This document shows, piece by piece, positions 41,271 to 44,289 of a stretch of DNA of 64,000 nucleotides. The translations under genes were made by a program, and so were the position numbers. How positions within the stretch are numbered: position 1 is the stretch's first letter; each line of letters starts with the position of its first letter. A model generated the notes under the pieces. The model was given only the letters and a program-made list of their open reading frames with translations. It did not search any database and was not told where the DNA came from. Origin of the DNA: Dendrobates tinctorius (Eukaryota); the NCBI RefSeq assembly GCF_039654945.1, contig NW_027361797.1, positions 20,026,001 to 20,090,000 of the forward strand, read 5' to 3'.

Positions 41271-43119
41271 CCAACAGTCCATAAAATGGAGGTAAAGTCC
41301 TTTTTCTTTAATTGTTGACATCATTATTTAGATGACAAAAGAGTGACATGTCTCCAGGCCTCATCTTCAGTGGCACTGTTGGTGAAATTTAGCTAAACAG
41401 AGGTAATTCCAATTTTCCTAGCTAAAATGACACTTTAGCTGAGTCTTTCAGTGATCAATCTCTTCAGCCAACTTTTCAGGAACAGTGCAAATGAAGTGCT
41501 CGTGACTACATTTTTTTATATCTGTGCCTCCAGTCTCACTGACTCATCTCTTCTCAGAACCACAACTATCAAGACTTGGCTGACACTTTCCTGTTCACAG
41601 AGGCTTAGAGACTCCCACAAAGTTGCTGACCATACGTTCACTTTCCCAACTCCCCTACTAAGAGTATTTCGCTGCCACAAATGGATTTATTCCTAGCTGT
41701 TCCCCTTCTCACTTTCACTGTTGTCCCCAGTAAAGTTTGCTTGAGCCAGAGCCTCTTGCTTCTTTGCCAAAACTAAATTCTCAACAGAATCTCCTATTCC
41801 TGTTACTAACACACAATCCCTAATCCTCCTCCCCAATATTGGCTGGCCTTACAAACAACGCTGTCTTTCCAATTAACAGGAACTGCAGCCAAAGAAAGAT
41901 AACTTTTGAATTCATTAGAGTAAAATACATGTATAAATACATTTAAACTCCAGGAATGTCAGAAGAGTGGAACGCCATCTTAACCACCATCACACAAGGG
42001 CCACATTGTCATACTGAACCAATCCAGGGACCAAACTAAAAATTTAAGGGGTAGTAACTTCTGTGATATTCGTGGCAAATCAAAAATATATACTATAAAT
42101 GTCTGATAGGTACAAATTCTATTTACAAGACTTTTGCTTCTAAAAATCAGCACTCTACTGGTACGTCCACATTGGGCTTTTTGACAAGAATTTAGAAATA
42201 GATTCTGCTCCTAAATCTACATAAAAAAAACATGTAATATTCTTTGAGTAAATTTCCGAGTGAATTTACTACTTTATTTACATTATTTTGAACATTTTGC
42301 AGTAATACTAATAGGAAACTAATTCAAAGAGTATTTGAAGCATTTTTATGTGGATTTTCAGTAAAATCTGCTTCTAAATCCTTGTAAAACTGGGTGAATA
42401 GGCCCTAAAGAGGAATCAGTCATACATACGCAATGCTCTTTACGATAGATCATGGTTTTTTTCCTTCCTACTTAATGATTCAGAACTCCCATAGCCTACA
42501 GTGGAGAGCGCCTCAGACATGTGAGGCCACCTGTCTGATTCACATACTACCTTCTGGAGTGCCAAACTGTTGAGACCATATTCTCCTGATGTATAAGGCA
42601 TCCAGAGATGTCTATACATGGCACCATTAGTACCTGCCAATCACTGCTCCTCAGCTACTGCCACTGCTCTTCTGTGTGAGGCTTCCTATATACAGTATAG
42701 CTAACCTGTCAGTCAAAAATTTATTCTGTCCATATGGTTGGGGGCTGCATAGAATGTCATCACGGGTCACACGTGGTCCCCGGGTCGCAGGTTGTGCACC
42801 CCTCCTCTACAGTCTATAGGAACATATATGAATGTGGCAGATTTACAGAAAGCTCCTTCTATGTGACATCCATAAAATAACCTTCAGTGCTTACTTGATT
42901 TAAGAATAAGAGCTTCTTCATCACTAGAAGTGTTAACGATATAATACGCACCCAGCAAAAAGGATAATTTACTATACATTTTATAGAAAACATTTAATAT
43001 TCAAATTGCCTCTTCAGAGAGGAAGACTAGAACTCTATAGCGCCACCTGTTGTAAGCAGCGATCCTACAACTCCCTATTGACCCTTTAACGAGCCTTGAA
43101 ATATGACTTAGGATAAAAG

Positions 43120-43201
43120 CCAAATCAGAATCTCAATTTGCAGACACTGTGTTTCGAGTTGTTGCCCCCTCATCAGTGCAAAGTGTAAGATCTGATTTGG
43201 C
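43120..43201 (-). ncRNA. extended type I hammerhead ribozyme
   Basis: Minus strand GCCAAATCAGATCTTACACTTTGCA-CTGATGA-GGGGGCAACAACTC-GAAA-CACAGTG-TC-TGCAAATTGAGATTCTGATTTGGC: intact core, GUC cleavage triplet (C at 43143), long stem I with internal loop. Confidence 0.88.
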
Positions 43202-43245
43202 TAGGTGAGAGACTTTGGACTGAGGTATCAGGGGTAATGTTTCTT

Positions 43246-43336
43246 CTTGTGGAGAGTGGCATACCGGCCCTGGCATGCTGATGTAAGGAGGCTTATTTGC
43301 GAAGTAATGCTACTCTGGGAAATTTAATATGAAAAT
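43246..43336 (-). promoter_or_regulatory. snRNA-type promoter-like motifs (octamer, SPH, PSE)
   Basis: ATGAAAAT (43329) and ATTCAAAT (42999) each differ from ATGCAAAT by one base; TTCCCAGA..AGCATT is SPH/Staf-like; TCTCCACAAG (43255-43246) resembles the recalled Xenopus PSE TCTCCNNATG. Confidence 0.5.
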
Positions 43337-44289
43337 TAACTCTTCAAAAGGAAGAGGACTAAAACTTTATAGCGCCACCTGTTGCAAGTCACTATCGACC
43401 CTTTAACGAGCCTTGCAATATGACTTAGGATAAAGGCCAAATCAATTCCCAGAAGAGCATTGCAAGGTACGTGGCCCCGGGGTCTTTACCATCAGAAGTA
43501 ATCAAGGGAACAGAGCGAGCTAGGGCGCCCATAGTGTTAGGGACAGGGAAGGAACCCCTGGTCCTGGGTCACCCGACAACAGAGTCGTGACACTTGCAAA
43601 TAGGCCACCTCACCTGCCCTTTGGGCTCGCTCAAACCACTGTATTAGTCAGTTGAGAGCTATCCAATTTTTTAATTGGATAGCACTCAGGCCAGTCATAT
43701 CTAATGGGGCAGTTGAGGTGACCTATTTAATGGGGCAGTTCACATTTTTTCTCATACCGATTAAGCATGAAAAAAAAATCCCTGCATACTACCATTTGAT
43801 GTGCTAATCAGACGAGACTCAACCATTCTAGTCTATGAGTGTGTGGAAAACATTGGATTGCATTGAGATGATATACTGTTCTCCATCTTCTCCTCACCTG
43901 TGCTACGAATCTGTCATCCAAGCACTAAACCAAGTTCTTTGTTTATGACATCATCACATGGACTGTAACCCAGTCAGCAATTTCCTACGCTGTTGCTCCC
44001 TTTTTCCTGTTGGCAGCTGAACCAGTCATTACATTTTACAAGTCCATATATTTCTACTTCCATATTGTAGTGTTTATTGTACTTATTCTTCCATCGCGAA
44101 GGTTGCCTAATGACTCACAAAGATCATTCTCTAAGAAGACTGATTCATCTACCACAAACCACAAAATAAAGAATGTAAAGTTTCATTCCAATTGAAGTGA
44201 AATAATGTACAATGGCCACCATCCACCAAAGAGACATTACTGGACTATATGAACAAAGGCAACTATTTTTTTATGATGTTTTATTGTAT

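What the first reader, a model, noticed from the sequence alone, without database searches (positions are those of the whole stretch)
42992..43617. 330-bp retrozyme/satellite-2-like unit: extended hammerhead downstream of a snRNA-type promoter
Seen: a repeat with a 330-bp period (42992 vs 43322) whose minus strand holds a complete type I hammerhead. It has CUGAUGA, GAAA, GUC at 43145-43143, ~21 bp of stem I with an internal loop, and short stems II and III. About 45-55 nt upstream of stem I is TCTCCACAAG; further up are SPH-like and octamer-like motifs, and the two octamer copies are each one different base from ATGCAAAT. Known: newt satellite 2 is a ~330-bp hammerhead repeat transcribed from octamer/PSE elements, and non-LTR retrozymes yield self-cleaved monomers and circular RNAs. 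Inference: this is a frog counterpart, a protein-free element that is transcribed and processed on its own, possibly uncharacterised in this lineage.
Basis: partly seen in the sequence, partly recalled or inferred. Interest (0 to 1): 0.9.

Follow-up and report, generated by a model that had tools for sequence, protein, structure and literature searches.

The report
Decayed frog hammerhead retrozyme copy
This stretch is an old, worn, one-and-a-third-unit copy of a very abundant frog mobile repeat that carries a self-cutting hammerhead RNA, a kind of element already described in frogs and salamanders, and this copy is probably dead.

Summary
The minus strand of 43202-43118 carries a complete type I hammerhead with GUC at 43145-43143. 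My descriptor expects about 0.003 such motifs per random 64 kb. The "330-bp repeat" is only 1.37 units: a full unit at 42992-43321 and a 123-nt partial unit at 43322-43444 that has no hammerhead.

Contigs from four sequencing runs, under four coded organism labels, show the unit belongs to a very abundant family. More than 11,000 contig pieces matched in each DNA run, and other copies show head-to-tail joints. The most shared part is the hammerhead and the block just 3' of it.

Compared with the family majority, this copy has a weakened helix II and mutated octamers. It differs by about 15% from the other copies laid on it and has no target-site duplication. With only one cleavage site it cannot release a unit-length RNA.

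Frog retrozymes are already published: 57 Xenopus families, present in all seven amphibians sampled. The snRNA-type promoter idea gets limited support. The family majority restores an exact ATGCAAAT next to an SPH-like box. However, the PSE-like box lies in the least shared segment, and one "octamer" lies outside the unit. This scan raised the same promoter idea earlier on other DNA of this genome. Ordinary overall.

The parts
42992..43321 (-). Full ~330-nt retrozyme unit (non-coding) holding the only hammerhead
   Evidence: Repeat register. Repeat depth starts sharply at about 42986-42992, and DNA to the left is single copy. No ORF of 70 aa or more lies inside it.
43322..43444 (-). Partial upstream unit (5'-truncated on the minus strand): 123 nt, 90% identical to 42992-43127 over 120 aligned columns, with a 15-nt deletion and no hammerhead
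   Evidence: Other family copies continue from about 43441 into helix I and the hammerhead ('goes back 276' joints with inserted letters).
43118..43202 (-). Type I hammerhead with extended helix I. Core CUGAUGA 43176-43170, helix II 43169-43156, GAAA 43155-43152, helix III 43152-43144, C17 at 43143. Predicted cleavage between 43143 and 43142.
   Evidence: Sequence. Descriptor scan (unique in the window, 0.003 expected). Fold z = -4.7. Weak covariance-model hit, RF03152 at 20 bits.
43156..43169 (-). Helix II, degraded in this copy to 3 pairs (G-C, G-U, G-C) with an 8-nt loop. The family majority has 4 G-C pairs and a 5-nt loop.
   Evidence: loose-end consensus before 43166; base 43165 left out in about 100 contigs per DNA run; 43157 A>G is the majority in three of the four runs and a minority in X1.
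43246..43255 (-). PSE-like TCTCCACAAG, 44-53 nt upstream of helix I and 103-112 nt upstream of the cleavage site
   Evidence: Sequence. Background frequency equals shuffles. It lies in the least shared segment of the family (43234-43295).
43304..43321 (-). SPH/Staf-site-like box (TTCCCAGAG...). CCCA is at positions 3-6, but position 12 is G, with the C at position 13.
   Evidence: Sequence. Staf-site definition from PMC3082894. Family majority letters at 43312, 43305, 43303 and 43301.
43329..43336 (.). Octamer-like ATGAAAAT (+ strand letters). The family majority has C at 43332, which gives an exact ATGCAAAT.
   Evidence: In one search, 43332 A>C appears in nearly all contigs of all four runs.
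42999..43006 (.). The same octamer position in the full unit, ATTCAAAT (one mismatch)
   Evidence: The X5 loose-end consensus before 43025 reads TATGCAAATTGCC (agreement 0.76).
43040..43053 (-). CTCF-like box kept in both unit copies (second copy at 43372-43385)
   Evidence: 2 mismatches each. A 17-nt block is identical in both copies. The family loose-end consensus is 1 mismatch from the motif.

Best explanation
The stretch 42992-43444, read on the minus strand, is an old, 5'-truncated, 1.37-unit insertion of an abundant amphibian non-LTR retrozyme family. These are ~330-nt non-coding units, each with a canonical metazoan type I hammerhead, the same kind of element as newt satellite 2, the axolotl retrozymes and the published Xenopus retrozyme families.

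The published model for the family is as follows. Multimeric transcripts are cut at each GUC by hammerheads that pair as dimers through their short palindromic helix III. The monomers are circularised by a host ligase. Reverse transcription, probably by Penelope-like element enzymes, yields new tandem copies.

Shown here: the hammerhead anatomy, membership of a large family, head-to-tail forms elsewhere in the genome, and the decay of this copy.

Inferred: this copy is inactive. It has one hammerhead only, helix II is reduced from four G-C pairs to three pairs including a wobble, both octamer positions are mutated, it differs by about 13-18% from the other copies laid on it, and no target-site duplication remains.

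Also inferred, and weaker: the family may carry its own snRNA-type enhancer and promoter, with an octamer and an SPH-like box about 160-190 nt upstream of the cleavage site and a PSE-like box about 50 nt upstream of helix I.
For: The hammerhead core and its three helices are present and unique in the window.

Family size and spread: at 80% likeness or more, 11,391 and 12,968 contig pieces were laid from two DNA runs under different organism labels, and 279 and 1,057 from two runs guessed to be RNA. Repeat depth starts sharply at about 42990. The most shared part is 43079-43202, which is the hammerhead plus the block 3' of it. Head-to-tail joints (43297/43300 to 42993/43004) appear in three runs.

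Decay of this copy: the family majority has a 4-bp G-C helix II that this copy has lost. The two unit copies are 90% alike over 120 aligned columns. Pieces of other copies show 22-34 differences per about 160 nt (table 8).

The unit has no ORF of 70 aa or more, and five larger ORFs checked nearby gave no reverse-transcriptase or GIY-YIG Pfam match.

Literature: canonical metazoan hammerheads have helix I of 6 bp, helix II of 4 bp and a short palindromic helix III, and act as dimers (PMC4209133). Axolotl and other amphibian retrozymes of about 330 nt form linear and circular RNAs (PMC7229834). Xenopus has 57 retrozyme families related to Penelope pLTRs (10.64898/2026.07.22.740005).
Against: No Rfam hammerhead model reaches its threshold, and Hammerhead_1 gives nothing even at E up to 10.

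There is no target-site duplication of 6 nt or more, so retrotransposition of this particular copy is not shown.

The whole unit folded as a circle is no more stable than shuffles (z = -0.43), unlike the highly self-paired circles described for some retrozymes.

I could not identify this family among the named Xenopus families.

RNA evidence is only from contigs of runs guessed to be RNA, so expression is not shown.
Confidence: 0.85

Rival explanations
1. The unit family is an autonomous transcription unit. An octamer plus SPH-like enhancer and a PSE-like box drive RNA polymerase II snRNA-type initiation near the 5' strand of helix I, as reported for newt satellite 2. On this reading the locus is a decayed example of a promoter-bearing retrozyme.
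For: The family majority letter at 43332 (A>C in nearly all contigs of four runs under four organism labels) gives an exact ATGCAAAT. The homologous site in the other unit is restored in the X5 loose-end consensus. An exact octamer on either strand of a 330-nt unit has roughly a 1% chance expectation.

On the hammerhead strand the octamer lies 7 nt upstream of a TTCCCAGAG... box with the CCCR core of Staf sites. Adjacent OCT and SPH boxes are the known layout of snRNA-type enhancers (PMC2235858).

TCTCCACAAG sits 44-53 nt upstream of helix I. From my memory, Xenopus U1/U2 PSEs read TCTCCNCATG near -55.

The newt satellite 2 promoter is on record through the citation of Coats 1994 in PMC2220036. 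An earlier follow-up in this scan (s1-362229) reached the same suggestion on other DNA of this genome.
Against: The SPH-like box lacks the highly conserved C at position 12 (PMC3082894).

The PSE-like box lies in the least shared stretch of the unit, and other subfamilies diverge immediately upstream of helix I (loose ends at 43202 and 43211).

In this window such motifs are no more frequent than in shuffles.

A specialist review states that metazoan retrozymes seem not to harbour promoters and are probably transcribed by read-through (PMC7761336).

No transcription start, cap or polymerase data are available. The PSE consensus I used comes from memory, because the original papers are not held.
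Confidence: 0.35
2. The unit is the solo pseudo-LTR (pLTR) of a Penelope-like element whose coding part has been lost, rather than a separate non-autonomous retrozyme.
For: Penelope pLTRs carry hammerheads (PMC4209133). Xenopus retrozyme families group as sisters of pLTRs (10.64898/2026.07.22.740005). A 5'-truncated upstream partial copy followed by a full copy is the usual Penelope insertion form. The same window holds a pair of minimal Penelope-type hammerheads at about 12774 and 13109.
Against: No ORF of 70 aa or more overlaps the unit or lies between its two copies, and the five larger ORFs checked between about 38.7 and 46.6 kb gave no RT or GIY-YIG match.

This hammerhead has a canonical helix III and an extended helix I, not the minimal form typical of metazoan Penelope elements.

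The left flank is single copy and the right flank is an unrelated repeat.
Confidence: 0.1
3. The hammerhead-like motif is a chance match inside an ordinary repeat and has no ribozyme meaning.
For: Rfam gives no significant hit. Helices II and III are only 3 bp in this copy.
Against: The descriptor expectation is 0.003 per 64 kb. The hammerhead region is the most shared part of a family with more than 10,000 contig pieces, and the family majority has a better helix II than this copy.
Confidence: 0.03

Closest known systems
Xenopus and amphibian non-LTR retrozymes (Li, Clavereau & Pollet 2026 preprint, 10.64898/2026.07.22.740005; Cervera & de la Pena 2020, PMC7229834)
   Same: A non-coding ~330-nt unit close to the amphibian mean of 316 bp, a type I hammerhead, many dispersed monomers plus tandem forms, and intergenic or intronic remnants.
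   Different: This locus is a 1.37-unit remnant with one weakened hammerhead and no target-site duplication. I could not assign it to a named family (REP4, Penelope-6_XT and others); published primers do not match.
Newt satellite 2 (Epstein & Gall 1987; Coats, Zhang & Epstein 1994, as cited in PMC7229834 and PMC2220036)
   Same: A ~330-bp unit, an extended hammerhead with a short palindromic helix III implying dimer action, and octamer-type motifs upstream of the ribozyme on the same strand.
   Different: Sequence homology to the newt unit was not tested because no newt sequence was available. The promoter is functionally shown in the newt and only motif-level here. The frog SPH-like box is off by one position at the key C.
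Hammerheads in pLTRs of Penelope-like elements (Cervera & de la Pena 2014, PMC4209133)
   Same: Type I hammerhead in a retroelement repeat, dimer-mode helix III, about 9,000 motifs in Xenopus tropicalis, and a 5'-truncated tandem insertion form.
   Different: No RT or GIY-YIG ORF was found nearby. This hammerhead has a canonical helix III and a roughly 23-bp helix I, whereas the metazoan Penelope form is minimal.

Membership tests
Type I hammerhead ribozyme | Conserved core C3-U4-G5-A6-N7-G8-A9, G12-A13-A14, A15.1-U16.1 pair, H17 | tested here: met
   All positions are present at 43176-43143 on the minus strand.
Type I hammerhead ribozyme | Three helices around the core, with helix I open and helices II and III closed | tested here: met
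   Helix I has 6 bp, an internal loop and about 17 bp. Helix II has 3 bp (4 bp in the family majority). Helix III has 3 bp.
Type I hammerhead ribozyme | Covariance-model score at or above the Rfam gathering threshold | tested here: not met
   No hit at gathering. In E-value mode only RF03152 appears, at 20 bits against 56.3 required. Hammerhead_1 is absent.
Type I hammerhead ribozyme | Self-cleavage after H17 | not testable with these tools
   Needs in vitro transcription. Only 1 of 9 Xenopus dimers cleaved in the 2026 preprint.
Metazoan non-LTR retrozyme | Short non-coding unit (about 170-400 nt) repeated head to tail, each unit with a hammerhead | tested here: inconclusive
   This locus has 1.37 units and one hammerhead. 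Other family copies show head-to-tail joints.
Metazoan non-LTR retrozyme | Many dispersed genomic copies | tested here: met
   More than 11,000 contig pieces at 80% likeness or more in each of two DNA runs.
Metazoan non-LTR retrozyme | Target-site duplication flanking the insertion | tested here: not met
   No shared flank of 6 nt or more at 42991/43445 or at 42991/43593.
Metazoan non-LTR retrozyme | Expressed as unit-length linear and circular RNA | tested here: inconclusive
   Family contigs, including one head-to-tail joint, occur in runs only guessed to be RNA. Contigs cannot show ends or circles.
Newt satellite 2 | Sequence homology to the newt 330-bp unit | not tested
Newt satellite 2 | Functional snRNA-type promoter (PSE plus octamer enhancer) | tested here: inconclusive
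   The family majority has an exact octamer. The SPH-like box fails at position 12. The PSE-like box is at background frequency and in the least shared segment.
Penelope-like element pLTR | Flanks an RT plus GIY-YIG ORF | tested here: not met
   Only short ORFs between 38 and 48.5 kb, and the five larger ones scanned gave no RT or endonuclease domain. A badly decayed ORF could have been missed.

The most novel reading that the evidence does not exclude
Frog retrozymes of this family carry their own compact snRNA-type enhancer and promoter: an exact octamer, an adjacent SPH-like box and a PSE-like box about 50 nt before helix I. If so, their RNAs start inside each unit instead of depending on read-through transcription. 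This would extend the 1994 newt satellite 2 result to anurans and contradict the current review statement that metazoan retrozymes lack promoters. The conserved CTCF-like box would add a possible chromatin role.
Probability: 0.35. Interest if true: 0.5.

Novelty: already known. Interest (0 to 1): 0.22.

Why it matters
As a locus it matters little. It is one decayed copy among thousands of a kind of element already catalogued in frogs.

The useful residue is at family level. Reads from four runs under four coded organism labels agree that the family majority has an exact octamer next to an SPH-like box, on the hammerhead strand. That gives a concrete and cheap test of whether animal retrozymes carry their own promoter, as shown for newt satellite 2, or rely on read-through transcription, as the current review holds.

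Tried and rejected
- Rfam at gathering threshold over the whole window gave nothing. In E-value mode on 42800-43700 it gave only a 20-bit RAGATH-1-hammerhead match.
- TRF found no array at the locus.
- BLAST of the unit against the window found no further copy.
- I tested whether the second copy extends beyond 43444. It does not; the score equals shuffles.
- A metagenome scan for the family hammerhead core returned two phage or bacterial-type hammerheads (L001, L002) and no frog DNA, so no independent copies could be aligned.
- Published Xenopus retrozyme primers were compared with the unit. None scored above shuffles, so no family name could be assigned.
- A search for target-site duplications found none.
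- A circular fold of the whole unit was no more stable than shuffles.
- Coats 1994 and Schaub 1997 are not held in the library. The Xenopus PSE consensus therefore rests on my memory.
- Pfam on five neighbouring ORFs gave no retroelement domain.
I report only the majority letters and loose-end consensus strings that the reads tool printed.

Full report
**What is in the sequence**

Read on the minus strand, 43202-43118 holds a complete type I hammerhead.
- The 5' strand of helix I is 43202-43177.
- CUGAUGA is at 43176-43170.
- Helix II with its loop is at 43169-43156.
- GAAA is at 43155-43152.
- Helix III is at 43152-43144: three pairs (A-U, C-G, A-U) around a 3-nt loop.
- The 3' strand of helix I is 43142-43118.

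The minimum-energy fold recovers the long helix I: 6 bp next to the core, an internal loop, then about 17 bp. The fold has z = -4.7 against dinucleotide shuffles.

I wrote a descriptor requiring the core, at least 4 bp in helix I and at least 3 bp in helices II and III. It finds this site alone in the 64-kb window and 0.003 sites per random window of the same composition.

Rfam does not recognise the motif. Nothing reaches a gathering score. With permissive settings only the RAGATH-1 hammerhead model matches, at 20 bits and E = 1.3.

**The repeat**

The "330-bp period" is real but incomplete. Unit 1 is 42992-43321. The second copy starts at 43322 and ends at 43444, inside the 3' strand of helix I. 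It carries a 15-nt deletion and is 90% identical over 120 aligned columns. Beyond 43444 the alignment score equals that of shuffled sequence.

The locus therefore holds 1.37 units and a single hammerhead. On the hammerhead strand the partial copy lies upstream. This is the usual shape of a 5'-truncated tandem retro-insertion. I found no target-site duplication of 6 nt or more.

**The family**

I laid contigs of four public runs, under four coded organism labels, on 42800-43700 at 80% likeness or more.
- 11,391 and 12,968 pieces came from the two DNA runs.
- 279 and 1,057 pieces came from two small runs that are only guessed to be RNA.

Left of about 42990 the DNA is single copy. From there to about 43605 it is repeated.

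The most shared part is 43079-43202, which is the hammerhead and the 60 nt that follow it on the RNA strand. The least shared part is 43234-43388.

Other copies show head-to-tail joints (43297/43300 to 42993/43004, in three runs). Other copies also continue from about 43441 into a hammerhead. The family therefore exists as full units and as tandem or circular forms elsewhere.

The interval 43462-43592 belongs to a different repeat. Its copies continue leftward with a different consensus, and its family ends at 43592. The 17 nt at 43445-43461 are unassigned.

**State of this copy**

The family majority differs from the window copy at many places.
- In helix II most contigs lack base 43165, and the printed loose-end consensus gives four G-C pairs around a 5-nt loop. 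Having G at 43157 is the majority in three of the four runs. This is the canonical metazoan helix II of 4 bp (PMC4209133). The window copy keeps only G-C, G-U and G-C.
- Pieces of other copies differ from this one at 22-34 positions per roughly 160 nt (table 8).
- A circular fold of the whole unit is no more stable than shuffles (z = -0.43).

Amphibian hammerheads with a short palindromic helix III are reported to cleave well only as dimers (PMC7229834; PMC4209133). Releasing a monomer also needs two cleavage sites. I therefore infer that this locus cannot yield a unit-length or circular RNA by itself.

**Promoter motifs**

TCTCCACAAG is at 43255-43246, 44-53 nt upstream of helix I. The pattern TCTCCNCATG with up to one mismatch occurs 15 times in the window against 14.7 in shuffles. 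Only its position is suggestive. That consensus is also from my memory, because the primary papers are not held.

One-mismatch octamers occur about 2 per kb here.
- TTGCAAAT at 43594-43601 lies outside the unit.
- ATGAAAAT at 43329-43336 and ATTCAAAT at 42999-43006 are the same unit position in the two copies.

The informative result comes from the family. At 43332 nearly all contigs of all four runs read C, which gives an exact ATGCAAAT. A loose-end consensus restores the same octamer at the other copy.

On the hammerhead strand the octamer lies seven bases upstream of TTCCCAGAG..., which has the CCCR core of a Staf site at positions 3-6. The box lacks the conserved C at position 12 and has it at position 13 (PMC3082894). 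Adjacent octamer and SPH boxes are the known layout of snRNA-type enhancers (PMC2235858).

Two points count against the idea. The PSE-like box lies in the least shared segment, and other subfamilies diverge just upstream of helix I.

I could not obtain independent copies to measure per-column conservation.

**Comparison with what is known**

Satellite 2 of newts is a ~330-bp hammerhead repeat with an snRNA-type RNA polymerase II promoter (cited in PMC7229834 and PMC2220036). The axolotl has about 126,000 such hammerheads in retrozymes that give linear and circular RNAs. Xenopus tropicalis has about 9,000 minimal hammerheads.

A 2026 preprint reports non-LTR retrozymes in all seven amphibians sampled. 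It describes 57 Xenopus families with a mean consensus length of 316 bp, related to Penelope pLTRs. Only one of nine dimers cleaved in vitro.

The kind of element is therefore already described in frogs. A specialist review says that metazoan retrozymes seem to lack promoters (PMC7761336). A conserved octamer block in frogs would be a modest addition to that picture.

This scan has raised the same idea before on other DNA of this genome (s1-362229). It has also judged sister loci ordinary (s1-366788).

**Verdict**

This is a real hammerhead in a real retrozyme family, but the copy is decayed, incomplete and probably inert, and the element type is known. The promoter reading remains a family-level hypothesis at about one chance in three.

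Noticed in passing
window 43040-43053 and 43372-43385 (minus strand): A CTCF-like box (ACAACAGGTGGCGC and GCAACAGGTGGCGC) is kept in both unit copies, inside a 17-nt block that is identical although the copies are only 90% alike. The family loose-end consensus is one mismatch from CCASYAGRKGGCRS. The window holds 15 sites with up to 2 mismatches, against 8.5 expected.
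   Followed up: partly
window 12748-13150 (+ strand): Two minimal Penelope-type hammerheads lie 335 bp apart, with CUGAUGA at about 12774 and 13109. Only the second passes my descriptor when helix III is relaxed to 1 bp. This is a different family from the one studied here.
   Followed up: partly
window 43462-43592: A fragment of an unrelated abundant repeat abuts the 5' end of the retrozyme. Its family continues leftward with a different consensus and ends at 43592. The 17 nt at 43445-43461 belong to neither repeat. How the two came to be joined is unexplained.
   Followed up: partly
window 43079-43140: Outside the hammerhead core, the most shared block of the family is the 60 nt just 3' of the cleavage site on the RNA strand. 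A 19-nt stretch (43080-43098) is identical in both copies. Its function is unknown. It might be a 3'-end or reverse-transcriptase recognition signal.
   Followed up: no
L001:10986-11012 and L002:4302-4328: The metagenome contigs matching the hammerhead core pattern carry bacterial or phage-type hammerheads between short genes. They are unrelated to the frog element.
   Followed up: no
window 58197-58390: A run of 194 N (assembly gap or masked). I left it untouched.
   Followed up: no
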